Shown piece by piece: positions 5,665-41,955 of a stretch of 64,000 nt of DNA. A program made the translations under genes and the position numbers. The first letter of the stretch is position 1, and each line of letters begins with the position of its first letter. Under the pieces are notes generated by a model. The model was not told the DNA's origin and made no database searches. It saw only the letters and a list, made by a program, of their open reading frames with translations. This DNA is from Convolutriloba macropyga (taxonomy: Eukaryota), in assembly GCF_964194025.1 (NCBI RefSeq), contig NC_134470.1:76384001-76448000 (forward strand), written 5' to 3'.

Positions 5665-7289
5665 NNNNNNNNNNNNNNNNNNNNNNNNNNNNNNNNNNNN
5701 NNNNNNNNNNNNNNNNNNNNNNNNNNNNNNNNNNNNNNNNNNNNNNNNNNNNNNNNNNNNNNNNNNNNNNNNNNNNNNNNNNNNNNNNNNNNNNNNNNNN
5801 NNNNNNNNNNNNNNNNNNNNNNNNNNNNNNNNNNNNNNNNNNNNNNNNNNNNNNNNNNNNNNNNCATCAAAAAATTAGTAGCTTTTGAGCATCATTTAAA
5901 GCGCAAAACGTATGAAATCAACATAATTTGCAATTTCTCTTATATGCCACAATAGAGAGCTTGGTCTTTGTATTGGTTATTTTTTCAGCAAATCAAACAC
6001 CAATTAAAAACCTCTAGCAAAATTAGCAAGACTTTTATGAAAACATTTACACCAACTCATTTTTTGTACCAGTGGGTCCTCCAAATTTTATTTTCCACTT
6101 TTCAATATTTTTTCCATTGAAACATTTTTGTGGTACGATTACCATGCGGTTTTCGTGCCTTGTCTGTTTTATAAAAGTGCGTTCGAATGAAATCTCGTAT
6201 TGGGATTGAGTTAAACAAGACATTAAAAGAGCTTTGATTAGATGTACTCACCTTAATTAGAAGTCCAAAAAAAGTAGAGAATAAAATTACGATTTTTTTT
6301 TTCAAAATTTTAGTTGAAGAAGTTCACTTCAAGTAACAAATTTGCAATGTAACAATGCAAAAGAGAATGTAGAGTGAAAGCTTTCCAAAAGTACTTTATT
6401 CTGATGAGTTTTAAGCTGGTTCATTTGCGTTTGCTTCTCGCTTCTCAAGTGATTTGCGTTTAGAAAATAAAAATGTATGATATTTTTCATTTTAGTTTTT
6501 TATTGTGTTTCTTTACTGCAAAAAAAGATATTAAAAATAAATAAATTTTGAAGCAAAGAACACAAATTTCAAATCTAATTATCAGCAAAATGCATTGATT
6601 GAATATGAACACAGTTAAGGCACTATTTTATACAATTTTTTGAATCATTGCAATAAAATAGAGTTTATTCAGAGTTTTAGGAGTTTTATTATGAGTTTTC
6701 TGTGTTCTGAGTTACAGATAAATTTTTCGTGGGACTATCCTATTGTTTTGATTGCATATTGGGGCAGCTTCAAAACTGTCTCAGGAAATATTTCTCATAA
6801 AATTTTTGCTGGAAAATCGAGAGCTGCCAAAGTTAATCCAGAAGTTAGGTTGTTGTTATTCAAAATTACAGAAAGGGGTGGACTCTACTGAGTGCCTGGA
6901 GCTTGATGGCTCCTATCCTTGGTCACGGATTGAAGTTTTGGAAAATGCGCTATCAATAGTTGATACATGTCTTGATGGAGTGCATCCAAATAACGGCGTT
7001 ACAAAAAATCCGGTAGAAAACAAACGTCACTATAAAATAACACATAACCTACCAATATCCCAGAATACAGTTCAACCTCGGAAATTAAAATAGAAATTTG
7101 AACTTTGCTTGAGTTGAGTAACTTGTTTGACATGATATTTTTACCATTTGTTTTTACTTTCTGGTTTATTTGAGAAATGTGAAAGATCAAGTATAAATTA
7201 AGAAACGTTACTTACTTCAAGTAAAAATGAAACATGATAGTTTAGAAAATGTGCTGATTTATTTCCTGAGAATGCTCATTTTTTTATTC

Positions 7290-10270
7290 ATTGCAGTTTT
7301 TCGTAGCGTTTCATTATTTCTTGACAAAAATTTTTCTGCTTCTTTGTGGTGACATAGAAAAAATTCTAGGCCCTTTGATGATTTAAAATTTTCTACTTGG
7401 ATGGTGCTTTATTTGGCGCTCAAAATAGCATTAAATTTCTACTTTTCAACGTTCGTAGCATACAAAATAAGTATCAAGATATATCAAACTTGCTCCAGCA
7501 GCTGCACTCGGAAACTATTGTTATAGTAACTGAAACTTGGATGAGCAAAGAACAAAGCTTGATTATAAACCTCAGTGCTGAGCACGATTTTATGCATTAA
7601 AATTGGTCACATCAAACAAGAGCAGCCAAGGTTGATTGTGTAGGAATATGGATGCTTTAGAAAATAAAATGTAAACGCAGAAGAGAATTTGATTTGGCTG
7701 ACCTGAAGTTTTTTGAAACGTTGTGACTGGAACTAGGCAATCCTACAATGAAAAAATGTCTCATTAACATCTCTTATTCTCCACATCAAAGCCTGGGTGA
7801 TTTTTTTTAGACGAATTAAGTGCAGAGGTTTCTAATGCGTTCTCAACTACAAGTAATATTCTTTTATTTGGTGATTATAACATTGAAATTGGCAGAAAAG
7901 CCTTCAGAATTTTGCGGCGGGATTAGGATTTCAGTTATCTGACATTGATATTCCTACACGAATAAGTAATAATAAAATAAGTTTGATAAATCACTGTTTT
8001 TCGACTAATGAGCAAATCAATAGTTGGAAAATCTGCTTACCTCCTTTCGATATTGATCATAATGTTTTTTTTTTCAGAGCAAACGTTTTTTTGTTAGGAG
8101 AAAAACAAAATTAGTTTTTCGACGAGATACAAAACATTTTGTCGATGAAAAATTCAATAGAGATCTGGCTCTTGCAGATTGGAGAACAGTGTATTAACAA
8201 AGAAATTAACAAAGAACAGTGTATTAACAATGAAATATTTGCAGAGTTTAACAGAATTTTGTTGAGAACACTCCAGAAAAACGCACCACTAGAGAAGAAA
8301 TTAGTTTCCAATATAAAAGAGACTACTTGAGGTAAACCTTGGGTGACAAAAAAATAAAACAGTTAGTTGCTGAGAAACATCATTACTTCAATGACTACAA
8401 AGTGACACAAAGTTCTGATTCATTTGTGTCTTTTAAAAATTATCTATCTTGTAAATCGAAAGTTAAAAAAACACAAAAACAATTTTCAGAGGACTTTTTA
8501 AGAAAATTGAAACCCCGAAAGAGAAATGGAAATTCATTAAGAAAAAAATGGAAAAAAACAAGAGTCCAAACATCACTGAAATTGGTGAAAAAGGTAAAAA
8601 AAAAACGAAAGACAAAAAATCAATATGCAACGCTTTTAACAGATTTTTCAGCGAAATGGGCATCGACAGAGGGCAGATTGTTCAATTGAACGTCGAAAAA
8701 ATAAAGCGAAAATTTTGAGAATTAAATTTTAGACCTTTTACTTTGAGGGAAATCTATAATGTTATTGACAAGCTAGACAACAACAAAGCGCCAGGGCCGA
8801 GATACATTATTATTTGGGCATTGAAATCCGGCAAAATGCTATTGGGACAAGTATTCAGATTATATTTAACAATTGCATTCAAAATAAAGTTTTCCCAACA
8901 AATCTTAAGGATGCACACATTATTGTCCAATTTCCGTATCACCAACTTTTGCAAAAGTTTTTAAGAGACTTTTAACTAATCAGTTAGTGGAATAACTTGT
9001 AAAGTTTTCGCTTTTGAACAAAAAACCATTTGGTTTCCAATTCAGAAAGTCGTCTACTGATGTTGTGCTTTACTTTATTGAAAAAATAATAAGAATTATG
9101 GAAGATAACAACGACACAGGTGCTGTGTTCTTAGATCTTGCAAAAGCTTTCAATTCAATTTCACATGAGATCTTTTTCAAGAAAGCTGAAAATCTGAATC
9201 TCTCTCAATCAACAATTTTGCTTATCAAATCTTTTCTCGCAAATCGAGCACAATGCGTAAATCTGGGTTTTGACTTATCAGATAAAATAACTATTAATCA
9301 TGGTGTTCCAAAAGGAACTGTGTTAGGACCTCTTATTTTACTGTTATATATCAGAAATTTTTCTGAAAAACCGGAAGGAGAAATTGATGTTGTTCAATAT
9401 GTGGATGACACTAGTATTATACGCAAATTTGAACGCAAATGAAAACATTCCACAAAAAAATGAAAAAATATTAGAGCAAACAGACAACTATCTGACAGAG
9501 AATAAACTCACTTTAAATGCCTATAAAACAGAAAGTTTTTATTTTACCAATCATACTTATTCGGATCCAGAGCTCTCTGTTATAGGCGAAGTTATCACAC
9601 CAGCTCATATTTTGGTTATCTGGGTGTACAAATCGATTCAAACCTAAACTTTGGAAATCACTTGAACTAAGTTTTGAGCAAAATGGCTAATGCAATCCGT
9701 TCTTTGTATCTTGTAAGAAATCAAATTCCCTTGAAAGTAAGAATTGATGTTTTCAAGACAGTTTTACTCTCTCATCTTTCTTTCAGTGGAGTTTTCTTTC
9801 AAACTCTTACAGCAAAAAACATAAACCGTATAAACAGGCAAATTAAATGGGAAATAAAAGTTTGTGTTTTTCGACAAAAATTTAACCATTCCATTGACCT
9901 TCTCATTGAGGATCGTATCCTGCCAGCCGAATTGTTTATCTCAAAATTTAGCCTAACGAAGCTACAAACAGATATAAGACACTGCGAAAAATCCAAAAAT
10001 TTTAAAATGTTTACTATTCGCCATAACGCTAGACAGAACATGAGAAAAAATCAAATTATTATCAAAAAGAAAATGCAAAAGAAATGGAGTAACAAATTTT
10101 TAATCTTGAATGGCGTTCAAAAATGGAACAAATTGCCCTCCTCGATAGGAGTTTTTGACCGAGTTTTTGCTCGATCAACACAAGAAAGTACCCGTTATGG
10201 ACAAATAGGAGCATTCAAATCCCATTTTACCTATGAGAACGAACAGCCATAATTTGAAGATTATTTTATT
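7290..10270 (+). mobile_element. Degenerate non-LTR retrotransposon ORF2 (APE endonuclease + RT), CR1/L2/Crack-like
   Basis: APE motifs FNVRSIQNK, VTETW and GDYNI (~7870). RT motifs GAVFLDLAKAFNSISH, GVPKGTVLGP and YVDDT, with C-terminal WNKLP. Many frameshifts and stops. Confidence 0.93.
7321..7374 (+). other. Degenerate 2A-like (StopGo) peptide upstream of the LINE APE domain
   Basis: Translates LTKIFLLLCGDIEKILGP, two single-base changes from LLLCGDIEKNPGP (att/aat, cta/cca). Confidence 0.75.
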
Positions 10271-18440: not shown

Positions 18441-19440
18441 TTTTCACAACCGTTCGGTTCGACAATTGGTTTTTCTTACTTTGATTACCCTAATTTTCAG
18501 ACTATGATATGAAAGAGAGGAGCTTTTCCGTCAGTGGGTGCATATTGTTTGTACCCCCCCCCCCCCCCCCCCCATTCGAAGCCCCCCATCCCCCTACAAG
18601 CGTATGGCAAATTGCTCTACTACTATGTACTATCTGACAAGCAGCAAAAATGACATCGACCAGTTTGTTCATCCCCGAATCGTATTATCACGTACCGTTG
18701 CTATTTCAGTATTGATTTGAGGTTGAAGATGGCACGGGTATACCATTAACACAATTAGACATGTCTTATATTGTGTAAAATTATGAATTTATGTTACAAT
18801 GCTGTATACATACGAAATTCAGAAGGATAAAATCAAGATTAGTCCAGTCTCTCTTGCTGGTGAAGGCCAGAAGTACAGACATCAACTTTTAGCTTCTGCA
18901 AATATCTTCTGTACTTTTTCTTTTTTCCTTTGTCGGGATTATTGGGTGTCCCAGGAAAGCAATTTGCTTCTCCTCAAGCAAATAAACGATAAAATGTTGA
19001 ACACAAACGCTCTTTGTGAACTTCTCGCGTAGTTTTATCAACATGTCTATTACACTCTCGTTGTCATCGTTTTCACGGAGAAGAAGATTGTCCGGAAAGC
19101 CTGCTTCCACTAGAAGTCTTGCATAGTCCACCAGCAATTTCACTACAAAATTATTAGAGCATGTTTTCTTGGTTGACAGGATTTGAACGGATGGGAAGAA
19201 AAAATGTGAATAAATACGCAAAATTTCATCAAATATAATCATTGAAATTAAAAACTCAATGACAGGGAAAGAACAATATTGGGTCCTAAAACACAAAAAA
19301 AAATGTTTCCACCCACTTCTTTTTTGTTATTTTTTTCATAACCGTTCGGTTCGACAATTGATTTTTCTTACTTTGATTACCCTAATTTTCTTACTATGAT
19401 ATGAAAGAGAGGAGTTTTCCGTTAGTGGGTGCATATTTTT
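18441..19440. repeat. ~105-bp direct repeat pair (18441-18547 and 19333-19440)
   Basis: Both copies read aaccgttcggttcgacaattg.ttttcttactttgattaccctaattttc..actatgatatgaaagagaggag...gtgggtgcatatt. Confidence 0.9.
18889..19190 (-). CDS. Candidate terminal exon (helical/ankyrin-like), possibly of the 41955 gene
   Basis: Protein-like frame VKLLVDYARLLVEAGFPDNLLLRENDDNESVIDMLIKLREK...STEDICRS*, preceded by a pyrimidine tract. Same strand as the gene; acceptor not pinned down. Confidence 0.35.
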
Positions 19441-20099: not shown

Positions 20100-23000
20100 T
20101 GTGTCAACCCGGATATTGAAAGGACAATTTCTGTCCAATCTTATGAAGAGAAATCCAAAGGCGGCAACTAAAGAAGGATAAACGAATCAACAGCATAAGG
20201 CCAGCGAGACGATTTGAACAGTGCAATTCAGCAAATAGACTTAAGTGCGATCCATGCTTGAAATTGAAAACAAAAATAACAAAAAACCAGCAAACAGGCA
20301 TATCAAGATTGCAGCACAAATTCCTCACGAAGTGAGGTATTGAAGTCTATTGGACAAAATCAGCAAGAACCAAGGGCTTGGCTACAGAGTAAACGACGAT
20401 CCAGAGAACAAACTAAAAGTCCTCTAACAACAGACTGTATACTTTTCAGAGGAGAAAGCCCCGAAGCAACTGCAGCCTAAAAACAAGCATGTACATTGTT
20501 GCAGGCCAACAAAACTGCACAACGGTGTGCAATGCAAATAATGTTTGAAAAAAACTGAGCAACAGCAAGCGGTGACGACACCCAACCAGGCAGGGATTGA
20601 ACATACAAAGAGAGCCAGAGGTAGAAATGCGATGAATGAATTTAATACAAAAGACGGACTATCTGAAGAAGAGCATGAGCTAACGCTCCAAATGAAAAAC
20701 AAAACGTTGGAAAATGTTTATGCTTGTTCCCAGTCAACCAGGTCGCGGGACACAGCAACCTCCAACCAGACGCAAAAGAAGAGCGATGTTCAAACTGGGC
20801 TAATCAAATCGGCAAACTTCAAACTCCAGATCGAACAACAGCTCATTTCGAACCAATATAGGCATAGTCAAGTCCCAGGTTATCAAAGTTTTTCCAGCGT
20901 TGAATACCGGGATATTTCCCCAGAAATGGTTAACGATACAACACTGGTTATTCTGGTAACAGTCACGAAACAAAACTGAAAACGGATGGAAAACTGCTGG
21001 GATGGACGGTGCGGCATAGCAAGTTCAATTCTGCAGGGGATCAACAGCCAATACCTGACCCTGGAAAATGAACTACCTCAAGACTGTGCTTACAGAAGTA
21101 GCAAAGTCTGAAATATCAGGAATGGGGTGTTCTGGAGAATTCTGTGATGTTGCTGGGAATATTCTGGAAAAAAAATTGGCAGGCCTCACCTGATCGTCGA
21201 CAACTCGAAATTGTATAAGCCAATAGTTATCCTAAATCAAGATCTCAAAGAGAACTGGTGCTTCTATGTTTATGATGAAGATGGAGACCGGCGTGATCTG
21301 AATATATCATTTTAAAAAAGCTATCTAGGATGGAATCTAGCAAGAAAAGGTCAGTTTTCAAAGGTGAGCAAAAAAATCCGAATAAGCGCAAAAAGAGACA
21401 AACGGTTTTCGTAGACTTAGAACTTCAGTTCAACTTCGAAGTAGAAAGAAACGAAGTAAACGCAAAAGGATCACTATCCGCCATCGAATGTATTCACAAA
21501 ATTTGGAATTGCCTATTTTTCAGGAACATGAGTGTAAATTATTGACACGCAGTTGTAAGGAAACAACGCTTATGTTTCGGAATTTTGATCAAGTGAGAAG
21601 AAGTCAAAGACTGTGAAGTCAAAGCGTGCGTTGTAATGAACGTATAAGGAAGCATAGCCAAGCGCTACATTCAGAAAATCAGAAACACGAGTGCAATCAT
21701 GCAGTCAATGTAAGCGCAGCGACAAAAAATCAACGAAACGAAGCTACAGTTTTCTTCGTCAGATTTCTTCGGCTCAATACAGAGCGGTGTTAACAGGAAG
21801 AACACACATGCATTCCACGATTTCGAATCATTGGTTTCACTCGTCGATCAAAACGTGCAAAACAAGTTAAGAGCCCATGAAACCGCTTTTAGGCTTTAAT
21901 CGAGCGCAGTTGCAATCAATCGAGGCGCTTTCACACCTGTCAAGAATATTGGAAAACACAAATTATGACAACAACAAATTGAAGCAAAGCCTCAACTTTT
22001 TGAGTGTTCTACATAACAGAAGCTTGAATGTTGATTAAACTTGGCGTCGTCCTTGTTCAAGATGCTACTGTGCTACTACGCCCATTGGAAAACAAGATAG
22101 GAACAAGAATCTTTTGCCGTTCTAGGAGAGTTAGTATTGTTTGTCAGCGGACACATAACGGGCAAAAAAAAACAACATTTTTGTGATTTCGATTGCACAC
22201 ATTTGTAAAAGTTGCCGGTAATGGCCAAAGTTGGTTGGTTTTTAAAAAAAATGCTTTCAAAATTAAAGTCCTCAATTGGTCAAAGAAAGAGTTTTAGGCA
22301 AAAAATATGCTAGAGAGTACAACAGGCGAGTGGTACAAGGTGTGATTTCTGTGGAGTGAACCAGAACTAAACCTAGCGAACAGCTACAGCTCAGTTCTAA
22401 GTCAGCTTTACTCAGTGGTGCGAAGATTGCAAAGATACCTGAACGTGAGGTTTGTATCACCAATCAATGGATACAGATGTAAAAAAGGTACTATTGATAA
22501 AGAATGGTATTTGAGACGCCATCCAAAGCAAAAACCGATCAAGCCGGCAAAAGTGAGAAATAATTGAAATGATGCATCAATTGTTTTAAAAAAAAAGTAT
22601 AATACAATAAACTAGTAGCTGAACTTGATCTGTTAAACGGTTCAATTAAATTAATATTAAAATCAAATGAAGGACCAACACGCCGACATTTGATATGGAA
22701 TCTTTGCGAGTGCAGCTTCCAGAACAGGAGATAAGATGCTTGAAATTTCTATTGTGGCCGAGAACTAGCGAAGCTGCTCAAATGTACAAACATTAGCATC
22801 ACGTTTTTGTTTTTGGAGCAAAGAACTCTTCAAATTACGGTCCAAACTATTGGAACTAGATGATGAAGATTTGTAACNNNNNNNNNNNNNNNNNNNNNNN
22901 NNNNNNNNNNNNNNNNNNNNNNNNNNNNNNNNNNNNNNNNNNNNNNNNNNNNNNNNNNNNNNNNNNNNNNNNNNNNNNNNNNNNNNNNNNNNNNNNNNNN

Positions 23001-26000
23001 NNNNNNNGCGACCTCATCAAATCATAAGAAATTAGAAGAAGCAATCGGATTTTCTGATCAGTTGCAACCAATTTTCTTGCAACAGGTATTTGAATTGAAG
23101 CAGTTGACCAGCAAAAACGATTCATTTAATGAAGCAATCCCAGTAGCCTTGAAATCAATGAGCAACACAAAGCAAGTCGAAGAGGAAACCAATGCGGAAG
23201 GATCTTAAGAGCTTGGACTACAATGAAATGTTACTGATCTCATGACAGTCTTCAAATGAGTTAACAGAAAAGGAGTTGGAACAATCATTAATTAGGAGAA
23301 AATTGTTTGCTGGTTTCTTCAGTATTCGAGCCCATTGGATTGTGCTCTAAGACTATTTAATTTTGAATTACTTCTGATAGGCATCTCGACTAAGAATGGA
23401 CAACATTGGGACAAAGAAGTTGAACCTGGTGAAGCAAAATAGTTCTTGAAGTGAAAGGTCAAGTACCGATTAGGATAAAGCAACTTCAAAACATCGAGGG
23501 ATAAAACTGAACTTCGGTTTTTTGCTGAAGCATATGACGACACTATGTGTATAGCCTTTCTACTTTCAAAACCGAAAAAATCTGCTGAATTAGCATTTGT
23601 GATTGGAAAATGCACAGCGGTTCCGACGAAGCGTGTTCAATGCCATAAATGGAATTGTAGGCAGCAGTCATTGCAGTAAAGTTGAAGGAGCACATAATCA
23701 AGGGTAATGCATTCTTAGTGATTCTGTTCAGACTCAACGACAGTATGGCTGTGGATATACAGTTCGTGTTATTAAAAAACAAGTGATTGCGGTCAATCCA
23801 ATAGCTGTGATATTGGATACAACTGACATTTGACAGTGGAAACATGTAAGCTGTATATACAACCCAATTGAAATTGCCACTATGTTATTCGACGTTAAGA
23901 AACTCATTTGAAGTGAAGGGCTCACTGCGACGGACAGTTTGAAACAACCACAAGGAGAGTGGCCAGAGCAAAGCTGAAGGTAAAATACCCTCATCAGTCT
24001 TTATTACAAAGGCTGAAGAAATGAAAGCTGTTTTCATTGAGAACAACACAGTAAAATAAAAAGGGCTAGTAAAAACTGTGCCACGAGATCTGAACCAGGA
24101 AAAACTGACAACAATTGTAGTCAGCACTGGAGGGTGGGGGAAACGCAAAGGAAATCATCTTCAAACTACCACAACAAGAACAGTTTGCTGAAAAAACGAT
24201 ACTCAGGAACGCGGAAAAAAACTTCTAAAACCATTAAAATCCTGCAGTTTTTACCCCTCGTGATCCAATAAGGACCTATTCGAGCCCAATGACGAATAGA
24301 CAGAATTCAATTGAATTTTGATATAAAGCATTCAATTTTGTTAAAGTGGAAACATAAAAATTTTGTTCTTGCGTATCAAGTACATGAATCACCGAAACGA
24401 AAGTAGTGGTCATGTAGTTAACATTTTTCAGCAGATGAAATACATTCTTGAGAAACGACAAGCCATACAATCAGTCAAAACAATTGCTTTAACTGCTGAA
24501 AGGACAGAGCACAAACAATATCTTCAGGAAAAGCAAACTTACCCGAAAAGTGGATAAATGCTTCACCGGCGTTTACTTTAACCCTTTCAATGTGACGATA
24601 AGACGAAGGATCCAAAAGCGATTGTCTGGTCCGTTAACTTGACGAACTATTAAAGTGATGCAAAACAAATGGTACTGAAGTTGCACACAGACAGATGTCT
24701 CAAAATAAAAATTGGATCTGTTGGACAATAGACAAAAAGCTCACTTATTAGTTACATGAGTAATAACGTTGTTAAAGTTGAATGAGAACCTGCAGAACAC
24801 GTTACGGCAAGGAACAAAAAAGGATAAAAGAACATCTAATTTGGCAGAATGGACAGCACTAAATTGAACTTCAGTACAAACCATCCGATCAAGTTACATT
24901 GGAAACATCACAGATTTGAGTTATTTTTGCATGACAAGCTTGAGAACAAAAACCAAAAGCACTGATCATGTGCGAATTTTTTGAAGCAGAGGAGCTTGAT
25001 TCAAGGCGAACAAAACACCTCAGTGTCAATCATGAACAATTGTGTTAACAGCAGAAAATGCAGAGCACAAACGATAAGAAAAGTAAGTGCGGTTAGATGT
25101 TTCAACGGCATTTACGAATCATAGGTTAGACTATTTTGGCCCTATCACAGTGTTGATTGGGCGAACGAACGAAAAGTGATGGTCTTGCCTGTTTAATTGT
25201 CTAACTGTGAGAAACACACAAGTTGTACCCAAGTTGCACTCAGATAGTTGTCTCAATGCAAACATGGGATTGGTTGCACAAGAAAAAATCCAGGTAACAT
25301 AATCTGCTACAATAGTAGTAACTTTGCTGAAGTTGAATGAGAGCTAACAGAGTACGTTGCGGCATGGTACAAAAAGAGATAGAATATAATCTAATTTGAA
25401 CAAGATTTAGAGGAAAATGCAACCCACCCGTAGCACCTCAAGTTGGGGGTGTATAGAAACGTTTGGTCACATAATGCAAGAGAGCTATGTATGCGGTGTT
25501 GAGGAACATCTCGGTCATCAAGAAAAAGTTTTCATCCACGATGTGCATTGTGGATCCAACTTTAAACGCAAAATTGGTGACTCCATTCAGCGCAGACCTT
25601 AATAACTAAGAAGCATTGACTCCAAATCAATTTTTCCTAGGCAACAAAAACATTTGCTTACCTTTTCCACACGGCCTTGAAAAATTGTTGACGACCAAAA
25701 AATTTTTTAGACATAACCTAAGCTAATGCGAATCTATTTTGAGAAAAGTTCATCAAAGAATAGTTGCCAATTTTGAATAATGGACAAAAATGGCAATCTC
25801 GCTTGATTATCAATCTGGCCTTGAAAATCAATCTTGCTTGATTAATCTAAGTAAACAACGAGCGAGGATGTTTGCAATTAGTGTTCAGTTACAAAGAATA
25901 ACGAGGGGTTCTGAAGCACTTTTATTGATGTGATTCAATACGCGATAGTTTGAACGAACAGCGGAGTTTATTAGTGACTACTAGTCAAGATCAATTTTTT

Positions 26001-28360: not shown

Positions 28361-29219
28361 TGATTGTGCAGCCTAACTTACCGTTGTATTGTTGAAAAGA
28401 CCAATAGCTTATTTTCTCATTCTTTCCTACTGAGGAACAAAGTTCTCAAAAACGATAAATTTTGGGCTAAGCATAAATTTAGTTTCCCTTACTGGCTCTA
28501 ACGAAACCTAGAATATTTATGATGCTGTGTTGTTATTGGAACCAACTGAAAACAGTAGTTCTTTATTTATTTGAGTCAGTTTTTTTAATTTCCGAGTTGA
28601 TTGGAAATTGCCCCACTTCAGCAGGAGAACGATAAAAACTCTAAATTGGGTTGACGGTTACTTGATATCATCTTTCACAGTTTCTTGAGCCGATTTCCAA
28701 TATTCGATTTTTAAGTTGAGTTTTTAACACAACTCAAAAAATTTGATTCTTTCAATTTGGATTTTTTTTTTTTGATATTCTGAGCGGAAAAAGTTTGTTG
28801 AACAGTGTTAGCTGTTGAAACTAATTGAGTATTGTGTAATGCAGAGGTTATCTACAATATAGCGGAAATTACAGTTTACAAAAACTAACTGAAAAAACGT
28901 AACGGATTTGAAACCGCTGAAACGAACTGGGCGGAGTAAAGATTTCTTTGTTCTTGATAGGAGAGCAGCCGTTACAAAATGAGTTCTTTAGTCTGCTTTT
29001 TAATCTGTTGAAAATTTCATGCTGGTTTCTGGCAAAATGATTTTTTGCAACCTTGAATTGTTTGCTGAGTCTAAGCGTGACGAAAAATTCATTTGAACTT
29101 TTGTCCAGGTCTGAGCTGACCAAACCAAGTTTGAATACAGCATTGTTTTTCCACTTGCAGTGAAATAAACACAAAAAATAACTATCAAAAGTTTTGACAA
29201 GCGTTTTTATTTAACTAAC

Positions 29220-29745
29220 CGTAATTTTCATCGTAGCTCTTTTGAGCTTTGAAAACGACCCACTGCAGCATTGTCATTCCCTCTTTAGTCCGGCTGATTT
29301 CATATTGTAGGAGATTGTATCTCCTCAGCAAACCCAGACCCATTTGAAGTGTCTCATATTCTCTATTGTTCAGCAGAGTGAAGAGTATGTCTCCTCCCCA
29401 CTGCTGGTACTTGTCATTTCTTCTCTCTTCACTGTCTTCAATTTCAAAGCCAAGATATTCCGCGAAGAATACATCGCACTTGGCAGAATCAGAGAACAAC
29501 ATACAGAAGAATTCTAACTTTTTCAAACTGCACTCGAACACACACTGGTCTTCAAACTTGTTGGTGAGGGTAGACGATTTAATCTCACTACAGCCAAGTA
29601 GCATAAACAGTTTGTCTTTTCTGTCCCGATAATAACTCTGCCTAACTATTATATCAATTAAAGTCGCTTGTGGATATCTTCTGTTTATTTCATGTGACAG
29701 CACATTGCGTTTGCGGAGTAGTTCGATACAGTTCTTTGTTGCGCT
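29220..29745 (-). CDS. Candidate internal exon with duplicated ankyrin-like helical motif
   Basis: Open frame of ~175 codons ending at a phase-1 donor ACG|GTTAGT. Internal repeat ELLRKRNVLSHEINRRYPQATLIDII / GLLRRYNLLQYEISRTKEGMTMLQWV. Acceptor uncertain. Confidence 0.55.
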
Positions 29746-30278
29746 ACCTCCATCCTGGTAGAGATCTCGACTGTTTTATTCAATAGAAAACTTCGTGTTG
29801 CCAAGATCTTGTTTCGTTATAGCCACGCAAAGATCATACAAGTTCAAACATATCTTGATGTTTTTTGCCATGTAACATGACAAGAACTTGGCAATATTAT
29901 GCATGTTTTATCATGTTTCTTATGTTTTTTATCATTATCAAGTTTGGTTTCACTGGGGTAGCAATCAACTTGATTGCAACTAGAACTCTGAACGACATTT
30001 TATTTGAAACAATTTTAAAAAAGAAAGGAAATTGTACCGAAAAAAGAGAACTAGTTTGAGTCACAATAAAAGTGTTCATCTGGTGGTGGTCAAGAGAAAA
30101 GAGCGACGTAAAAGCGACTTTTGAGAGTGCGTTTTTAGACGCCCTCCGCGAATTCCAAGAATATACCACAGCTGATGGCAGGCATGGTCATGAATAGCGG
30201 TCTGATTCAGAGTTAAGGAAAATTTACGGAATTTGAATTATTTTAATTTTATTTGAAAAAAATTTCATAATCAAAGCA

Positions 30279-30869: not shown

Positions 30870-31136
30870 TTATTATAGTTTTTGGTGGACCGATTTTCCA
30901 GCTAAAATCACTGTACAACTCAAAATCAATGTGTTTTGGAAGTCTCATGGGGGGACTCATAGGGGAGCTTTCATTGCCTTTACTAGTCATGTTCATGGCG
31001 GAATTCCCAAAAGTCAAAATCTCTACCCAGTGTTTATCTGAGACAGCGCACCAATAGAGTAAGTTGAGAGTACAAATTGTTCCATCATCAACACAATCCA
31101 CCTCTTCACACGACACTATGGTGTTTTCAAGCAAGC
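30870..31136 (-). CDS. Candidate exon 3 of the helicase gene
   Basis: Acceptor ttgtttag|gc is phase 1, matching the phase-1 donor of exon 2. It opens (G)LLENTIVSCEEVDCVDDGTICTLNLLYWCAV... The 3' boundary is uncertain. Confidence 0.45.
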
Positions 31137-32848: not shown

Positions 32849-34028
32849 CCCGTACCGAACTCCAAGTCTATATCAGTACTAGGCAAGTCTAAATCCAAGT
32901 CTTATTTCGTTTTCCAGTACTGGGCAAGTCTTAAAAAAAGTCTTACAAGTCTGACAAGTCTTGGCCAAGACTTGGGTAACACTTGCAAGTTGATTCCCAA
33001 GTCAAACCCAACTTTTCAAAAAAATTCGAGTGAAATTTTCGAATTCAAAAAAATTTCGCAACGTGCCACGATTTTGGCATTACTTTTTGGCCACTTTCCC
33101 GGGGTGCTAGAAAATGATGCCGGGGGCATACCAAATTGATTATTGGGTGATTATTAGCCCCCCGGGAGGGTCCATTGAGGGTTTTTCAGGTGTTTTGGGC
33201 CGTTTTGAGCCATTTTTCAGCCGTTTGGAGCCGAATTTTAGCCGAAAATCACCAAATTTATGTACTTTTCAGATCAGCCAAATGTCGAACTTTAACCGAG
33301 GCAAAATTGTCAAAAGGGGTGCTACTGTGAGGGTTCCCATGATAGCCCGAGGTCCCGTGGTGCGGCACCCAGTGGACCCTATTATGGCGCAAAGTCCTAC
33401 AAATCTGCCCGAACAAGCGCCGAGAGACTGGATTAAGACTTGGCAAGTCTTGGCCAAGACTTGGATTAAGACTTGCCAAGTCTTGACCAAGACTTGGATT
33501 AAGACTTGCCAAGTCTTGGCCAAGACTTGGATTAAGACTTGGCAAGTCTTGGCCAAGACTTGGATTAAGACTTGGCAAGTCTTGACCAAGACTTGGATTA
33601 AGACTTGCCAAGTCTTGGCCAAGACTTGGATTAAGACTTGGCAAGTCTTGGCCAAGACTTGGATTAAGACTTGCCAAGTCTTGGCCAAGACTTGGATTAA
33701 GACTTGGCAAGTCTTGGCCAAGACTTGGATTAAGACTTGGCAAGTCTTGGCCAAGACTTGGATTAAGACTTGCCAAGTCTTGACCAAGACTTGGATTAAG
33801 ACTTGCCAAGTCTTGGCCAAGACTTGGATTAAGACTTGGCAAGTCTTGGCCAAGACTTGGATTAAGACTTGGCAAGTCTTGGCCAAGACTTGGATCAAGA
33901 CTTGCCAAGTCTTGGCCAAGTCTGACAAGTCTTAAATGTGTTATGATCATAGCTCTGAATCAGCACTGATACCTAGACTTGCAATTAGACTTGCCCAGTA
34001 CTGATATTGACTTGGCGTTAAGTACGGG
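32849..34028. mobile_element. Non-autonomous CMC/EnSpm-like element (1180 bp) containing a palindromic minisatellite
   Basis: ~45-bp TIRs cccgtaccgaactccaagtctatatcagtactaggcaagtctaa / reverse complement cccgtacttaacgccaagtcaatatcagtactgggcaagtctaa; flanking TT on both sides. Confidence 0.85.
33425..33932. repeat. 33-bp minisatellite (~15 copies) TTGGATTAAGACTTG(G/C)CAAGTCTTG(G/A)CCAAGAC
   Basis: Near-perfect period of 33, built from three 11-bp AAG(A/T)CTTG subunits; contains overlapping palindromes. Confidence 0.97.
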
Positions 34029-35985: not shown

Positions 35986-36683
35986 TTATTTTTGATACTT
36001 TTTATTTATGATACCTGAAGATAAAATTTGAAAGAAAGGTATTTATGGAAGAAAAGTGTGATTACTTTCTGTTTGTCAGTAGTTAACTCTAATGCTGTGT
36101 AGCAGAAACCTCTTTTAATTATTTGCTTTGGCACAGTTGCTGCTTTATAAGTATGCTGATATTGTTTGATGGATTCATTTTCAAGCAAAAAAATGCACTA
36201 AATGGTAGTAAATTGTAAATTTCAGGAGTCAGAACCTAACAAATAACGAGCCTTTTAGTATGTAACGGGCGCGATGTTTTACAGAACAATAGTGTGGCTG
36301 AGAGATTTGCTGTAAAAAACAGTAAAAATAAATATTTTTCACCGTATTAAAGTACTTGCATCTTTTACCTGTGAATTTTTATTGAACTTTTGTAACAATT
36401 GCGGTGAATGTGTCACTTCTTACCATAGCAAAATCAACATGCCAGTTTGAGACGCCGACCTCTTCCAGGCTTATATGCTAAAACTTAGTATCGTAAACTT
36501 TTTAAAATCTAAATCGGATTAATTCTGCTATAAATAAAAAATTATAATCGGCCCCGTCAGCGGTTTTTTACGGCAATTTTTTAAACCCCATTTACTGAAT
36601 TGAGCATTAAAAGACGCAATTCTTACAACCAATCACCGCAAGTATGAACATTTATATTTACACTCAAAATAAACAAAATCAAC

Positions 36684-37605
36684 CTGCATCGGGTTTCGCA
36701 GGGCTGGTCGGGGAGGGCCATCTGAAGAGACCGGGAAATGCGGCCGAAAGTTGAAGGCGGATCGTGCTTGGTTTTCTCATTATTGTTTGCGTGAAATTCC
36801 CCTTCATCAGTTTACCCAGTTCACTTCTCCACCAATCCCATGCCTGTGTTAGATCACAATCCTGTGGTTCTAGCCAGTTGGTGAACGTGACCTTTTCATC
36901 CAGAAACTGGTAGAACAATGTAACGTAAATATTGGTATCTGGTGACACGTAAGTTGAAAGCAACTCTTTGACTTCTGAAAGTCCTGCATTAACAATTATT
37001 CCTACCTCATATTGGGCTCTTGAAATAGCCAAGGTAACATCATTCAAAAGACGATTGTCTGTTTTGTCTATTGCAAGTAAGACTGATTGAAACTCTGAAC
37101 CTGAAACTTGCCATGAATATTGAGAAAAAACGACTTCAGTTGCCTTCCATTTTGATTTTAGCTGGTCAATTTTGCATTCTTCTGGCAAGTCATCAGACGA
37201 TAAAATAACAATCAATCTGCTGGAAAAATTGTCTCCAAGGAAAGCATCGCACCCAGTGAACAAAGATTCAAAGACGTTCTGTACGTAACAAACGGATACA
37301 TTTCGCTGTTCAGCCGTGAAGCATCCAGCCAATTTCACATTTTCCACAGGGAAAGGAAGTTCATTTCTCTGCTTCTCGATATATTTGCTTGTTATAGTGC
37401 TAATGTGGCTTGAACTTCGAAAGAGAATGTTCAAATTCTCATGCTTAAAATAAGCAGGAAGTTTACGCATCTCTATTTCAGAATAAGTTCCCAGTCCGAT
37501 TCCAGTAGAAGATATCCAGCAGATTCGGAAGTTAGGTAAATACTCCATCATGCCATCATCTATGCGGAATTTCATTTCGTCTATCATCAAAGCACTTTGC
37601 TTTCG
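36684..37605 (-). CDS. Exon 2: SF1 (Schlafen/UvrD-like) helicase motifs II-VI
   Basis: Phase-0 acceptor ttatag|CGA. Motifs ALMIDE (Walker B), LNILFRSSSHI, QVSGSEFQSVLL (V) and LAISRAQ (VI). Donor GCAG|GTTGAT is phase 1. Confidence 0.8.
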
Positions 37606-39921
37606 CTATAACGAATCATTTTCAAGCAAGAAAAGTTACACCAAACATTCTTGATGTTTTAGATTATTATATAAATCTCTGACCATTAGTGTGAATTTAT
37701 TTCTATATGTCTTTGGGCCGATTGAAAAAAAAACTTTTTTTAAAAAAAAAGGACAATAGCGAAGATGTCCTAAAAACCGTATGATAACAAAAAATTTTTT
37801 TCAAGGCCGGCTACATAAAAGTTTTTAACTAAAAACTTTTTGAAATTTTAGAAACCAAAATAAAAATCAAAATTACTTGAAACTAAAAAGAGATGAGTTT
37901 CATAAAACATAAAACTAACATAAAACTTGCCCGATTAATAAAACTTGCCCGATTAATAGTTGTTTTTTTAAAAAAAAATTAATCGCTTATTGGCAAATTT
38001 ATGAAAAAAACTGCCTGTTTTCTTTATGGGTGGTTTCAGTTACTCTTATCGCTTCAAGTTGATGTTACCCAGCCCTTGGGCCTCAAGCCAAGCCAAAACT
38101 CCTGTCGATCTTCTGGACTTTTTTCCATGAAAACTATTCTGAGACTAACCTCTGCTCTTGGCGCTATTCATGTAGATGCTCCATATGTATTACCTGACTT
38201 CTGTGAGAGGGATATTGAATCACCTCAACTTTTTCATATTATTATTATTATACTGATGGCAAACATAACAATTATCAACAAAAGCTGGGCTTCTTTTCTG
38301 ACGAAATAGTGACTTCGGGCTTTTTTAAAATGTTTTTAGCAACTAAAACACGCAAAAGAAGCAAAACACTCAAAACTAGATAAGCAATCTTAAAAATTCT
38401 GCCTGCTACAGACGTTGACGCAATAAGTGATCGCTTTGAGTTCATTTTGTTGAAAAAATATTCCTACATAAATGCCAAAAAAACTTCTGTGGGGGTTGCA
38501 AAAAAAGAAAAACTTATTTAAGTTTTCATCTAATAGGACGCAGAGGATGTAACGAAATACAGTTTCGAGAACTCCAAAACTTAACAGCTGCCGGTTGCTA
38601 CAATAATATCTTTAAAATGATTAATTAGAGTGCTAAACGGGAATCATATTTTGAAAATCATTTTTTACCGAAACGATCGTTGCTACCACTACAGCAGCTG
38701 TGTGCGCGGTTCAACAAATTTTACTGAAAAAGCAGTAAAAAATTTTTTAACCACTTTAAACGCATTCACCTCAAATCTTACATGATTCATTAAGAAATCG
38801 AGGCTATAGAAAACAGTGCTAACTTATTGAGGAAGCTTTGTACAGATTTGTAGTGTAGCGCAGTTTGAGTTTTTTTAACGTTGTCAATGCATTCACGGCT
38901 ATTCTTGCATCTTTTCCTGCGGAAAATTTACGCGATGAAGATATTCGGTAAATTTGGCGGTCCATTTTTTGTAAGATTTACACTTTCTGGCGGTAAAATA
39001 TTTCTTTTTTTCCACGCTCAAAGCAATTTCTACATTTTTCAGCTATTTTTAGCGTTCACACGTCGACTCGAGCAACAGTTACCTTTAGTCATCACATCGA
39101 TTCCTGTCATTGAGTTTCTCAAAAAAAGGAAAATAGTGGACATCAATCACGAAATTAACCTGATCTTTGTCACCAGAATCAGCGGATAACATTCCTGCGT
39201 CGCTCACCATAAGTTTTTCTTAGTACTCATACAGAGTCGTACATGTTTCTAAGTAACGGTATAAAGTCATATATGATTTGTATGAATTCTTGTAAATCAT
39301 GCCAATATCTTAAAAATTTATATAGTTTCTAATCAAATTGTCCTTTGACTTGTAGCTCATGGCTGCGAATTTTTCTCGTTCTTTTTAGTATGGAAATAAA
39401 GTTGAACTTTTAAATAGAATTTCGGTTTTTTTCTTAGGTGCCCCCCATTTCTTGTGCCCTTATAAGTACTTCTCACTATTCTGGTGTACATTTCGCTTTC
39501 TTTTATAATTTAGGGTGCTATATTTCTGTTCCTCCTGCGTTTTTAGGTTCTGGCGTATCCGGAACCCTTTTATGTCTTTTAGCTATCATAGCCTTTGTTT
39601 TTTCTTGCGTTTTTGTTCTTGTGCTTTGCCAACCAATTACGCTTTCTTTGATTACGTCGGATTGTCACTCGATTAAGTGTCATTGAAAAAAAATATTGTT
39701 ACCAAGAGCAACAGTTATGATGCGGACAACAGCGACAGCACGAGTAGACCACAGCACTTGATTTGTACACAGTTGTCCACAATTGCTCGGAAACAATCGT
39801 CACTTTTTTGTCCTTACACTCTTATGCTAACTTTTTTTTGCAAACTAACGATGGTTGTATTAGTCATGTGTAGAGTTTCTTTTTTTAAGATTCCGTTTTT
39901 GTGAACAGTGGAAATGATTAC

Positions 39922-41955
39922 GTGATTCGAATACTCCAACTCCCCGTTGATCTTACTGGATATGGATTTGAAGTCCGCAACTCCTTCTACTTTCAGTTTG
40001 CCTTTGAGGTCTTGGCTACAATTTCTCTCTACCAGAGCATCCAAATGTTTCCGAAATAAACATCTGTTTTTATCGTAGAAGTAAAAAATGTCGCCAACAC
40101 CTTCACATCTGGCCATTTGTTCACATTTGGCTAGTAGAAGTAAAGTCTTACCAGTTCCAGGTTGACCAGTTAGTATCAAGTGAGTAATGCTTTTATCGAG
40201 TAGAATTCGATGCTGTTGTGGACTTAACACAAATTTGAACTGCGGATGGCCACCAGATTTTCCCTCACGTTTTTTGTTCCTCCATACTTCGAATGATTCC
40301 TGGTACCGCTCGTCGACGTCTAAAGCGGTTTTCTCAATGAAAGCAGACATGCTTAAAGTAGCACTGGCGAAGCAAGCAGAGACATAGTCAAGGAAACTGT
40401 GTTTTGGTGTCGAGCGGGAGTCTCCCGGGCTAACTTCAACGTCATCAAATTTAGAAAGAACTGATACTGAGGGGTCCGTCTGTTTGTCAAATAATTCGTC
40501 AATGGTACTGTCACATTTCACGACCTTAAAATTGTCATTAATTCGCAGCCAAACAAGATCATCGCTGGATGAACTGGAGACCAGAAAGGACAAGTAGTTT
40601 GAAACTTGTGCCCAATTTCTGTTTAGTAGGATTGCCAAATCGCTTGGGCTAGTGATTTCCCGTATTTTTGTGACTTCTTCTTTTATGCTTGCGATTTGTG
40701 CAATAAAAATGTCATATTTTAAGTTTGGAAGGCATACAACGACCTTCAACCTGTTCAAATCTTCTAATGTCGTGTTAGCAGAATACAAGTTCCGAAAAGA
40801 ATAAATTATGAACTGCATCTGTGGAATTATCTTTGTAAGGCATTGCTTTAGTTTGTTTGAGACTGATGATTGCTTTGCTTTTTCGGGACTTTCAGACAAG
40901 CCGACCTCGAAAGCAACAATGTGCTCTTTTCCCAAGTACAACCAGTTTGGAATCTTTGAATTTTCTGGCAACGTTGCAATGGTCTGCAAGTGTTCGTGGG
41001 AGAAGCCTCGGATCAGAACCCCACAAGATTTCTCAATTTTAGCCAATAACAGTTCAGAGAACAGTCGGACTTCACCCAAATATATTGAGTAGTCTTTAAA
41101 TTTTCCCAACTCTCCCTTTTCTGTGTAACAATACAGCATGTTGTCCAGCATTCTATTGAAAGAGGGAATCGACTCAAGTTTGCACTCACGGTCGGGAAAG
41201 AAAAAGTCGAAGGTTTCAACAACTTTGTCAATTTGATTTATTGACACTGGCTCCCCACCCATGAACTTGTGAGTTGGGCCCGGAAGATAAAGTTCTTCTC
41301 TGTTTAGGTTGTAAATATAAAACGCTATCAATTTCTCGACAAAATCAAACTGCCTACGTGAACAAGCGACTGGTTTGTCGATAACTTCAGCCAGCTTTCT
41401 TTTTCTTGTTAAAATAAAAACTGGACTGATGTTGCCCGAATCACAGTTTTTCGAGATGTAGTCGTTCATCAATGACTGGAACTTGAGGAATTCTTTGCAT
41501 TTTTCATTTTTCGGAGCAGTACAAATCACAAGTTGTATAGTCATGGCATTCTGACCAAAACTCGGTCCGTAAAACTGTTTTACGACTTCATTCAAATTTC
41601 TGAGTTGGTGTTGAAAAGATTTGTAAATTTTGTAAATTTTGTCCCCCTCTCCTTTTTTGGAAATATCTTCTATCATTTTGAATATAAACACTTTACCCGA
41701 ATTCGGCGCCGGAATGAACAAACATCCAAACGGTATTTCTTCTGGTGGTGATGTAGAAGTTTTCGATGTGTTGTCAAGTGTTTTTGGATGCTTTCGAACA
41801 ACTAATCCGTTTTGTCCTGTCAGAAGAAGAAATGAAATCAACCTATTGTGCGAGAGGACGCTCTGAATAAATGGGTTAAGCAAAACTAGTTCACGTTTAG
41901 GCGAGGGAAGCACCACTAAGCTGCTTTCCATTGCGTCTCGTAAGTTTGGGCTCAT
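39922..41955 (-). CDS. Exon 1: NERD-like domain(s) + helicase Q-motif and Walker A
   Basis: Intact ATG-initiated ORF of 713 codons. GEVRLF...IPNWLYLG..IVAFEVG (from aa ~294), then LSPQQ and LTGQPGTGKT (aa ~597). Phase-0 donor CAC|GTAATC joins in frame to exon 2. Confidence 0.85.

What the first reader, a model, noticed from the sequence alone, without database searches (positions are those of the whole stretch)
36684..41955. Intact spliced gene: NERD-like pseudo-nuclease fused to a Schlafen/UvrD-like SF1 helicase (candidate immune/defence protein)
Seen: two long uninterrupted exons amid otherwise decayed DNA. They join in frame through phase-0 GT-AG sites (39921/37606) and give an ordered Q-motif (LSPQQ), Walker A (GQPGTGKT), Walker B (LMIDE), FRS, SGSEF and ISRA motifs. 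Known: SGLE/SRA-type motifs occur in Schlafen C-terminal helicases, and NERD-helicase fusions are known mostly from bacteria. Inference: aa ~294-420 (GE..LF..L, VLIRGF, PNWLYL, IVAFEVG) is a NERD/PD-(D/E)xK fold, so the protein may be a lineage-specific nucleic-acid sensor or effector, possibly of horizontal origin given the very long exons.
Basis: partly seen in the sequence, partly recalled or inferred. Interest (0 to 1): 0.85.

Follow-up and report, generated by a model that had tools for sequence, protein, structure and literature searches.

The report
Acoel nuclease-helicase gene, crippled allele
This is a real, spliced gene of an acoel flatworm, from a large undescribed family that joins restriction-enzyme-like nuclease domains to a Schlafen-like helicase motor, an architecture typical of antiviral defence proteins, but this copy has lost a key catalytic residue.

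Summary
Two long minus-strand ORFs (41955-39922 and 37605-36684) join in phase 0 through GT (39921) and AG (37606). The join restores an ordered SF1 helicase motif set. The junction is backed by an NCBI mRNA model of a 75%-identical paralogue (Convolutriloba macropyga LOC142345554), by a conserved GTA donor in over 10 paralogues, and by intronless relatives that read straight across it. No RNA run could be found.

The gene is longer than reported. The "stop" lies in a donor (GCAG|GTTGAT), and two further exons (31136-31027, 29754-29215) give 1201 aa.

- Structure searches put the motor closest to Schlafen 11/14/5/13 helicases.
- They put the whole nuclease-plus-helicase core closest to bacterial NERD-helicases.
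- Pfam NERD and SLFN-g3 models are not met, and no Schlafen core is present.
- A second, weaker restriction-enzyme-like domain sits at the N-terminus.

The family has at least 109 representatives at 50% identity, in at least four assemblies including Symsagittifera. It carries invariant D, E and K and a nearly invariant E, so it is probably an active nuclease.

The window allele alone lacks the Asp, through a 12-nt in-frame deletion. The other haplotype has a premature TGA. No bacterial relative was found, so horizontal origin is unsupported.

The parts
39922..41955 (-). Exon 1 (678 codons). ATG at 41955. Encodes the N-terminal REase-like domain, the NERD-like domain, a middle region, the Q motif and Walker A.
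   Evidence: ORF. Donor CAC|GTAATC. All paralogues start at the same Met and lose similarity at the same GTA.
37606..39921 (-). Intron 1 (GT..AG, phase 0). Contains high-copy repeats.
   Evidence: DNA depth peaks at 39136-39334 and 37942-38339.
36684..37605 (-). Exon 2 (922 nt). Encodes Walker B and helicase motifs III-VI plus a post-helicase helical region. Ends at the phase-1 donor GCAG|GTTGAT.
   Evidence: NCBI paralogue isoform X4 (P0005) joins at the same place.
31027..31136 (-). Exon 3 (110 nt), predicted. Acceptor tttgtttag|GC, donor CACTGG|GTAGAG.
   Evidence: tblastn of paralogue isoform X2 (P0008). Splice motifs. Frame-consistent model.
29215..29754 (-). Exon 4, predicted. Acceptor taccag|GAT. 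Encodes an ankyrin-like helical C-terminus. TAG stop at 29217-29215, followed by AATAAA at 29211-29206.
   Evidence: 67% identity to P0008 residues 480-648. Sequence. Model. The ankyrin lead is weak.
41311..41922 (-). N-terminal domain (aa about 12-215). The fold resembles restriction endonucleases (Mrr/REase-ARP/Cfr10I/Can2-type). No conserved catalytic motif.
40711..41103 (-). NERD-like PD-(D/E)xK domain (aa about 285-415): GE helix, beta strands, FEV strand, NK..Q helix.
   Evidence: The family has invariant D73, E86 and K104 and nearly invariant E27, in P0005 numbering. Secondary structure of the paralogue model. dN/dS 0.12.
40946..40947 (-). Site of a 12-nt in-frame deletion, specific to this haplotype, that removes Phe-Glu-Ile-Asp including the family-invariant Asp.
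   Evidence: Alignment with the collinear allele L001. Every other member has NFE(I/F)DW. The window model loses confidence at aa 310-342.
41125..41127 (-). Codon 277. It is TAC (Tyr) here. The other haplotype has TGA (premature stop).
   Evidence: L001 translation. The same two changed letters appear as minority letters in DNA runs X2-X4 of one sample (table 3).
40213..40227 (-). Q motif LSPQQ.
   Evidence: The two Gln are invariant in the 20-sequence alignment.
40144..40167 (-). Walker A GQPGTGKT.
37576..37590 (-). Walker B LMIDE.
   Evidence: D and E are invariant.
37402..37437 (-). Motif IV-like NLNILFRSSSHI.
   Evidence: N, R, H and I are invariant or nearly so.
37081..37104 (-). Motif V-like SGSEFQSV.
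   Evidence: Invariant in the exon-2 family. G and E are invariant in the wider family.
37003..37026 (-). Motif VI-like ISRAQYEV.
   Evidence: RAQYE is invariant.

Best explanation
The locus is a four-exon, 1201-codon gene of the acoel Convolutriloba macropyga or a very close relative. It belongs to a large, fast-diversifying, so far undescribed protein family found in acoel-type assemblies.

The domain order is:
- an N-terminal restriction-endonuclease-like domain with no conserved active site;
- a NERD-like PD-(D/E)xK nuclease domain with a conserved Glu-Asp-Glu-Lys set;
- a linker;
- a two-RecA-domain SF1 helicase-type ATPase whose closest structural relatives are the Schlafen group III (DUF2075-type) helicases;
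- a helical, possibly ankyrin-like tail.

Inferred mechanism: the motor uses ATP to load on and translocate along single-stranded nucleic acid. It feeds that strand to the in-cis nuclease, as in the bacterial single-protein defence enzyme Nhi and other NERD-helicase fusions. The terminal domains select or sense the target.

Inferred biology: a nucleic-acid-directed defence or genome-conflict effector family, acting on viruses or transposons and evolving by gene birth and death.

The copy in this window is open and spliceable, but its nuclease Asp has been removed by a 12-nt in-frame deletion. The other haplotype carries a premature TGA. This particular locus is therefore probably nuclease-dead and on its way to becoming a pseudogene.

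Shown: the gene structure by homology, the motifs, the fold similarities, the family size, the purifying selection and the two lesions. Inferred: the enzymatic activities, the coupling of motor and nuclease, and the defence role.
For: Gene structure. The donor GTA is conserved in paralogues, and intronless relatives align across the junction without a gap.

Organism and family:
- Hits come only from C. macropyga, S. roscoffensis and unnamed ENA eukaryote-like contigs.
- They come from at least four assemblies.
- The tree has many deep clades, and the window copy sits in a young clade.

Helicase:
- SF1 motifs are conserved.
- Foldseek PDB top hits are SLFN11/SLFN14, E 7e-11 to 1e-7. Swiss-Prot top hits are SLFN5/11/8/13/14.

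Nuclease:
- D, E and K are invariant and E is nearly invariant, placed on alpha1, beta2, beta3 and alpha2.
- It is the most constrained part of the protein, dN/dS 0.12.
- Atlas feature hits score 0.97, and all ten families shown carry NERD. Shape hits to NERD plus SLFN-g3/UvrD clusters cover residues 5-595.

Selection: omega is 0.30 against the paralogue and 0.37 between alleles.

Lesions: (table 3).

Analogy: Nhi is a PD-(D/E)xK nuclease plus DUF2075 helicase with antiphage activity, and DUF2075 includes the Schlafens (10.1101/776245). NERD domains are enriched in defence islands (10.64898/2026.09.30.754977).
Against: - There is no RNA evidence for this locus. The only runs found are genomic DNA.
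- Exons 3-4 and the terminal stop rest on a single paralogue isoform and on splice motifs.
- Pfam NERD, SLFN-g3_helicase and UvrD models, and the PADLOC Nhi model, are all below threshold.
- The AF2 models are mediocre (pLDDT 63-66, pTM 0.40-0.44), and whole-chain TM scores are under 0.5.
- No biochemical or expression data exist for any family member.
- The defence role is by analogy only.
- Both haplotypes of this locus look damaged, so this copy may have no function at all.
Confidence: 0.6

Rival explanations
1. This locus is simply a young pseudogene, a dying duplicate of the family. It has no function of its own, and its long open frame is only a remnant of recent selection.
For: - A 12-nt deletion removes a family-invariant catalytic Asp.
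- The other haplotype has a premature TGA at codon 277, also seen in reads.
- Exon 1 differs more between haplotypes (97.4% identity) than intron 1 does (98.7%).
- There is a 9-nt KIY duplication.
- No NCBI protein identical to the window product was returned.
Against: - 1201 codons carry no frameshift or stop, and the deletion is in frame.
- All helicase motifs are intact.
- Allelic dN/dS is 0.37, not 1.
- The NCBI search was length-limited to 1186 aa, so a full-length model would have been missed.
Confidence: 0.3
2. The family is a passenger or enzyme of a mobile element (a transposon-encoded helicase/nuclease). Its copy number would then reflect transposition rather than host gene duplication.
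For: - There are many copies.
- Neighbouring reverse-transcriptase fragments occur at several loci.
- Structural hits include the yeast Y' element helicases.
- Some members have long intronless ORFs.
Against: - Paralogues are old: 30-76% amino-acid identity, dS 0.40 to the nearest one examined.
- The intron donor is conserved across paralogues.
- Similarity to the paralogous locus stops about 0.9 kb upstream and 85 bp into the intron, with no shared termini.
- No transposase, Rep or integrase domain occurs in the protein.
- The RT fragments lie on the other strand.
Confidence: 0.06
3. The P-loop module is a STAND/NLR-type signalling NTPase (NACHT or NPHP3_N-like) with ankyrin repeats. On this reading the protein is an oligomerising sensor rather than a translocating helicase.
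For: The most frequent Pfam hits are AAA_22, NPHP3_N, nSTAND3/5, AAA_16 and NACHT. The C-terminal tail gives weak ankyrin-like leads, including mollusc nSTAND3-ankyrin clusters.
Against: - Those hits cover only the Walker A to Walker B half and are mostly below the cut-offs.
- The model has a second alpha/beta RecA-like domain, not a helical HD1-WHD.
- SF1 motifs Q, IV, V and VI are conserved.
- The best structural matches are Schlafen, Ighmbp2, Upf1, Sen1, and XPD/Hef-type two-domain helicases.
Confidence: 0.04
4. The gene was recently acquired by horizontal transfer from bacteria (a NERD-helicase defence gene).
For: Nearest neighbours by language-model features and by shape are mostly bacterial NERD-helicases. 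Exons are long, and distant members are intronless.
Against: - No bacterial or archaeal locus encodes a detectable relative.
- A phmmer scan of 1.84 billion representatives returned 109 proteins; the contigs examined were eukaryote-like, and plasmid tblastn gave only E = 1 or worse.
- The family is deeply diversified within acoel-type genomes and has conserved introns.
- An ancient transfer cannot be excluded.
Confidence: 0.05

Closest known systems
Bacterial NERD-helicase fusions, including Nhi (nuclease-helicase immunity; PD-(D/E)xK nuclease + DUF2075/SF1 helicase)
   Same: The order of modules is the same: a restriction-endonuclease-fold nuclease upstream of an SF1 motor in one chain. They are the nearest clusters by ESM features (0.97) and by shape over residues 5-595. 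There are weak PADLOC hits to Nhi and AbiO at the Q motif/Walker A, placed at the matching profile position. Nhi's nuclease and helicase activities are both needed for phage defence (10.1101/776245).
   Different: There is no HMM-level sequence match. The Lys is not in an ExK triplet but on the next helix. The acoel protein also has an extra N-terminal REase-like domain, a linker of about 150 residues and an ankyrin-like tail. It is a eukaryotic, intron-containing, multi-copy gene.
Schlafen group III proteins (SLFN5/11/13/14)
   Same: Their helicase domains are the best structural matches in PDB and Swiss-Prot (E 7e-11 to 1e-8). The overall logic is shared: a nuclease N-terminal to an SF1 helicase-like domain, in an expanded, fast-evolving, immunity-linked family.
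   Different: No Schlafen core (AlbA_2) or SWADL linker is detectable, and the nuclease here is PD-(D/E)xK-like rather than the Schlafen RNase fold. Pfam SLFN-g3_helicase scores are 16-17 bits against a cut-off of 24. Sequence identity is 10-16%.
UvrD/Rep/PcrA-type SF1A helicases and PhoH2
   Different: The 1B/2B accessory domains typical of UvrD are not evident. All Pfam scores are below threshold.

Membership tests
NERD (Pfam PF08378) | Match to the Pfam NERD HMM at or above the gathering score | tested here: not met
   Only 1 of 72 family domain segments hit NERD, at E 0.073. There was no hit for the window exon or for P0005.
NERD / PD-(D/E)xK superfamily | An alpha-beta-beta-beta-alpha-beta core with acidic residues on alpha1, beta2 and beta3 and a Lys completing the site | tested here: inconclusive
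   - The AF2 secondary structure of P0005 is H22-38, E45-51, E71-77, E82-87, H100-127, E143-153, carrying E27, D73, E86 and K104. D73, E86 and K104 are invariant and E27 is nearly invariant.
- Lys is on alpha2, not in ExK.
- No domain-level structural search was possible. Whole-chain shape and feature hits go to NERD-helicases.
- In the window allele the Asp is deleted.
SF1 helicase (UvrD-like / DUF2075-SLFN-g3) | Two RecA-like domains with Q motif, Walker A, Walker B and motifs III-VI in order | tested here: met
   The motifs are conserved in 14 to 20-sequence alignments. The two-domain model matches SLFN11/14, Ighmbp2, Upf1 and Sen1 and XPD/Hef-type helicases over residues 316-646.
SF1 helicase (UvrD-like / DUF2075-SLFN-g3) | Pfam SLFN-g3_helicase, UvrD-helicase, UvrD_C_2 or AAA_19 at gathering score | tested here: not met
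   The best scores are SLFN-g3_helicase 16-17 bits (cut-off 24), AAA_19 about 22 bits (cut-off 25.1), and UvrD_C_2 at E 0.21 in 1 of 14 members.
Schlafen family | N-terminal Schlafen core (AlbA_2 / SLFN RNase fold) | tested here: not met
   No AlbA_2/SLFN core hit in any Pfam scan. In the Swiss-Prot AFDB searches the Schlafen alignments begin at SLFN residues about 388-576, that is the linker plus the helicase.
Nhi (PADLOC PDLC02372) | Significant full-length match to the Nhi model | tested here: not met
   14.6 bits, E 0.0023, over 46 residues at the Q motif/Walker A only. 1 of 72 nuclease segments matched, at E 0.0026.
STAND NTPases (NACHT / nSTAND) | An NBD-HD1-WHD module, with the Pfam model at gathering score | tested here: not met
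   Hits are below the cut-offs and confined to the P-loop half. The only exception is NPHP3_N on paralogue P0005, at 25.8 bits against a cut-off of 24.8, confined to residues 336-400. The region after Walker B is alpha/beta RecA-like in the model.
Any enzymatic class | ATPase, translocase and nuclease activity | not testable with these tools
   This needs purified protein.

The most novel reading that the evidence does not exclude
Acoels, an early-branching bilaterian lineage, carry a large, previously unrecognised innate-immunity gene family. Each protein joins two restriction-enzyme-fold domains, a Schlafen-type SF1 motor and an ankyrin-like tail in one chain. This would be an animal counterpart of bacterial single-protein nuclease-helicase defence (Nhi/NERD-helicases). 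It would link prokaryotic DUF2075 defence enzymes to vertebrate Schlafens through an intermediate architecture, and it evolves by rapid birth and death, with the window locus caught while dying.
Probability: 0.3. Interest if true: 0.7.

Novelty: new variant of a known kind. Interest (0 to 1): 0.5.

Why it matters
Nuclease-helicase fusions are a recurrent solution for nucleic-acid immunity: Nhi and the NERD-helicases in bacteria, and the Schlafens in vertebrates. Almost nothing is known about such proteins in early-branching animals.

This family is invisible to Pfam apart from generic P-loop hits. It is large, selectively constrained (above all in the nuclease domain) and restricted, so far, to acoel-type genomes. 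If it is a defence family, it gives a testable animal case of motor-coupled nuclease immunity. It also gives a structural bridge between bacterial DUF2075 enzymes and Schlafen helicases.

For annotation, the finding shows that the local gene model needs four exons. It also shows that this allele is probably nuclease-dead.

Tried and rejected
- **RNA support.** The look-up of sequencing runs found only four runs, and their even depth over the introns shows they are genomic DNA. A second search restricted to RNA-Seq listed none. Splicing therefore remains untested by reads.
- **Sequence searches of solved structures.** Both exons, and the profiles A4 and A5, gave only P-loop-level hits such as DnaI, PhoH and RFC.
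- **Family libraries.** Pfam, NCBIfam and PADLOC scans of single proteins and of 14 to 72-member sets gave no nuclease family and no helicase family above threshold.
- **Combined alignment.** A mixed alignment of exon-1-type and exon-2-type fragments (A3) was misaligned by MAFFT and was discarded.
- **Window exon-1 model against PDB.** Foldseek gave nothing significant.
- **Bacterial and archaeal genome scan.** No relative was found. Plasmid tblastn gave only E = 1 or worse. The Bacillus UvrD-domain protein that was fetched has no NERD part, so it was useless as a NERD reference.
- **STAND/NLR reading.** Considered and rejected; see the rival explanations.
- **Transposon reading.** Considered and rejected after comparing flanks.

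Full report
**1. What is in the sequence**

The window is AT-rich eukaryotic DNA, about 35% GC. On the minus strand there are two exceptional ORFs, 39814-41955 (713 aa) and 36679-37590 (303 aa from the first start codon).

Read on the minus strand, exon 1 ends ...TCG AAT CAC | GTAATC, with the G of GT at 39921. Exon 2 begins after ...TTATAG |, with the G of AG at 37606, as CGA AAG CAA AGT GCT TTG ATG ATA GAC GAA. The codon just upstream of exon 2 in frame is TAG, so the acceptor cannot lie further upstream.

The join places Walker B (ALMIDE) after the Q motif (LSPQQ) and Walker A (GQPGTGKT).

**2. Support for the junction without RNA**

Four lines of evidence support it.
- NCBI's model of a 75%-identical paralogue, Convolutriloba macropyga LOC142345554 isoform X4 (P0005), reads ...SSKINKLKKRNRRNQSALMIDE... 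It is joined at the same place.
- In the alignment of 19 exon-1-type proteins, similarity ends at one column. Most of the read-through ORFs then continue with Val/Ile-Ile/Leu, which is a conserved GTA... donor.
- More distant relatives encode the whole region in a single ORF. They align across the junction without a gap.
- No RNA test was possible. The four runs returned for exon 1 cover introns and exons evenly and assemble across the intron, so they are genomic DNA of one sample. An RNA-Seq-restricted search listed nothing.

**3. The gene is longer than reported**

Exon 2 ends ...CCC GAT GCA G|GTTGAT.

Paralogue isoform X2 (P0008) continues past the homologous ...PSPTSPAKLNTG. Its continuation matches the window collinearly at 31158-30859 and 29760-29263, at 67% identity for the latter.

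The splice motifs are tttgtttag|GC (31136), CACTGG|GTAGAG (31027) and taccag|GAT (29754). With these the frame stays open to TAG at 29217-29215, followed by AATAAA. The resulting model has four exons and 1201 codons.

Exons 3-4 rest on one paralogue isoform and on splice motifs, so they are less certain than exons 1-2. P0008 has no match below 29263.

**4. Organism and family**

All sequence relatives come from three sources:
- C. macropyga (NCBI names);
- Symsagittifera roscoffensis (P0136, LOC134848914, 35% identity over 97% of P0005);
- unnamed ENA contigs that look eukaryotic, with reverse-transcriptase fragments and 35-40% GC.

The contigs come from at least four assemblies: ERZ25071359, ERZ25878734, ERZ25074608 and ERZ26859043. 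One of them holds a protein 97% identical to the S. roscoffensis one.

An exhaustive phmmer scan of 1.84 billion representatives gave 109 proteins at E ≤ 1e-3.

A tree of the nuclease-like domain shows many deep clades. The window copy sits in a young clade with three other Convolutriloba-type sequences.

No bacterial or archaeal genome encodes a detectable relative. Plasmid tblastn gave only E ≥ 1.

**5. Domains**

Pfam, NCBIfam and PADLOC see only the P-loop half of the motor, through models such as AAA_22, NPHP3_N, nSTAND, AAA_19, ResIII, PhoH, SLFN-g3_helicase, GajB, AbiO and Nhi. Almost all scores are below the cut-offs.

*Conserved residues.* The 20-sequence alignment of single-ORF relatives (A4) shows these conserved positions, in P0005 numbering:
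- D73, E86 and K104 are invariant, and G26-E27 is nearly invariant.
- Q327 and Q328 are invariant.
- G347, G349, K350 and T351 are invariant.
- D433 and E434 are invariant.
- W454 is invariant.
- N483 is nearly invariant, and R487, H491 and I492 are invariant.
- G594 is invariant, and E596 is nearly invariant.

In the 72-sequence domain alignment, G, E, F, G, F, D, W, E and K are each at least 90% conserved.

*The NERD-like domain.* The AlphaFold model of P0005 (pLDDT 66) places these residues as follows:
- E27 on helix 22-38;
- D73 on strand 71-77;
- E86 on strand 82-87;
- K104 on helix 100-127.

This is the alpha-beta-beta-beta-alpha-beta order of PD-(D/E)xK nucleases, with the Lys moved to the following helix.

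*The motor.* After Walker B the model shows a second alpha/beta domain. Structural searches give:
- Foldseek against PDB: SLFN11 (E 7e-11) and SLFN14 first, then Ighmbp2, tobamovirus helicase, Sen1 and Upf1.
- Swiss-Prot AFDB: SLFN5/11/8/13/14 first.

*The whole core.* ESM-Atlas feature search on P0005 gives score 0.97. Its first hits are mollusc NERD-containing proteins, followed by bacterial NERD-UvrD/ResIII/SLFN-g3 helicases. The shape search aligns residues 5-595 to bacterial NERD plus SLFN-g3/UvrD clusters, with TM 0.36-0.49.

Pfam NERD itself matches only 1 of 72 segments. The domain is therefore NERD-like by fold, motif order and context, but it is not a demonstrable Pfam NERD member.

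*The N-terminal domain.* Residues about 12-215 of the window protein are modelled with pLDDT 70-88. They repeatedly draw weak restriction-endonuclease-fold neighbours:
- small unnamed AFDB proteins and an Mrr-domain protein;
- REase-ARP and Mrr clusters;
- Mrr_cat/NERD/PDDEXK feature hits at 0.75.

No catalytic motif is conserved there. I read it as a probably non-catalytic second REase-fold domain, at low confidence.

*The C-terminal tail.* It gives only weak ankyrin-like leads, score 0.73.

**6. Selection and the state of this copy**

Against the paralogous gene on L007, exon 1 has dS 0.40 and dN/dS 0.30. The NERD-like part is the most constrained, at 0.12. The family is therefore under purifying selection, and the nuclease-like domain matters most.

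The contig L001 is collinear with the window over about 20 kb at 94-98% identity, so it is an allele or other haplotype.

Compared with L001 and with every other family member, the window lacks 12 nt between 40947 and 40946. The lost bases, ACTTTGAAATCG, are flanked by ACT microhomology. The deletion removes Phe-Glu-Ile-Asp, including the invariant Asp. The window's own AlphaFold model loses confidence exactly there, at residues 310-342.

The L001 allele keeps FEID but has TGA at codon 277, where the ENA caller wrote W. The same two base changes, at 41125 and 41126, appear as minority letters in DNA runs X2-X4 of the single sample (table 3).

Allelic dN/dS is 0.37 (24 synonymous and 34 non-synonymous differences), and exon 1 is more divergent than intron 1.

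Both haplotypes therefore carry a likely disabling lesion in the nuclease-bearing exon.

**7. Mechanism and rivals**

The best-supported reading is a single-chain nuclease-helicase. An SF1 motor translocates on nucleic acid and presents it to an in-cis PD-(D/E)xK nuclease. This parallels bacterial Nhi and the NERD-helicases, and is structurally allied to the Schlafen helicase module.

Two published points support the analogy. DUF2075 links Nhi and the Schlafens (10.1101/776245). NERD domains are enriched in defence islands (10.64898/2026.09.30.754977).

A defence or genome-conflict role is inferred from the architecture, the lineage-restricted expansion and the birth-and-death signs. It has not been shown.

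- *STAND/NLR reading.* Rejected on the second RecA domain and the SF1 motifs.
- *Transposon reading.* Unlikely. The paralogues are old and the donor is conserved. Similarity to a paralogous locus ends about 0.9 kb upstream and 85 bp into the intron, with no shared termini.
- *Recent horizontal transfer.* Unsupported.
- *Young pseudogene.* That this particular locus is a young pseudogene is a serious possibility.

**8. Verdict**

- two extra exons;
- an extra N-terminal domain;
- an allele-specific loss of the catalytic Asp;
- no evidence for horizontal transfer.

The family is a new variant of the known nuclease-plus-SF1-helicase kind and is not described in the literature I could search. Interest is moderate.

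Noticed in passing
window 39136-39334 and 37942-38339 (intron 1): The DNA word depth in the sample's runs jumps to about 3000-4300x and 200-380x, against about 55-65x nearby. These intron segments are therefore high-copy repeats.
   Followed up: no
L001:2509-6066 and 6576-10152 versus window 45327-41804: In the other haplotype or assembly, the 3.5 kb upstream of the gene is tandemly duplicated. The duplication includes the first 152 bp of exon 1.
   Followed up: partly
L001:10819-10821 / protein P0001 residue 274: The public ENA protein shows Trp where the DNA has TGA. The gene caller for that contig therefore used a code reading TGA as sense, and other ENA 'proteins' of this family may hide stop codons in the same way.
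   Followed up: partly
window 18889-19296 (-): This is a 135-aa ORF with a helical-repeat look (…LLVDYARLLVEAGFPDNLL…). It has no match to paralogue isoform X2, so its link to this gene is open.
   Followed up: partly
window 33114-33950, both strands: Three overlapping ORFs of 219-273 aa lie on opposite strands, inside intron 2 of the model. They were not examined.
   Followed up: no
window about 22900-23020: There is an assembly gap or masked run of N, seen as X in ORF 22856-23125. It was left untouched.
   Followed up: no
window 41632-41640 (codons 106-108): A 9-nt tandem duplication (KIY KIY) is present in the window allele but in none of the other 16 full-length family sequences of the alignment, P0001 (the other allele) among them.
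   Followed up: partly
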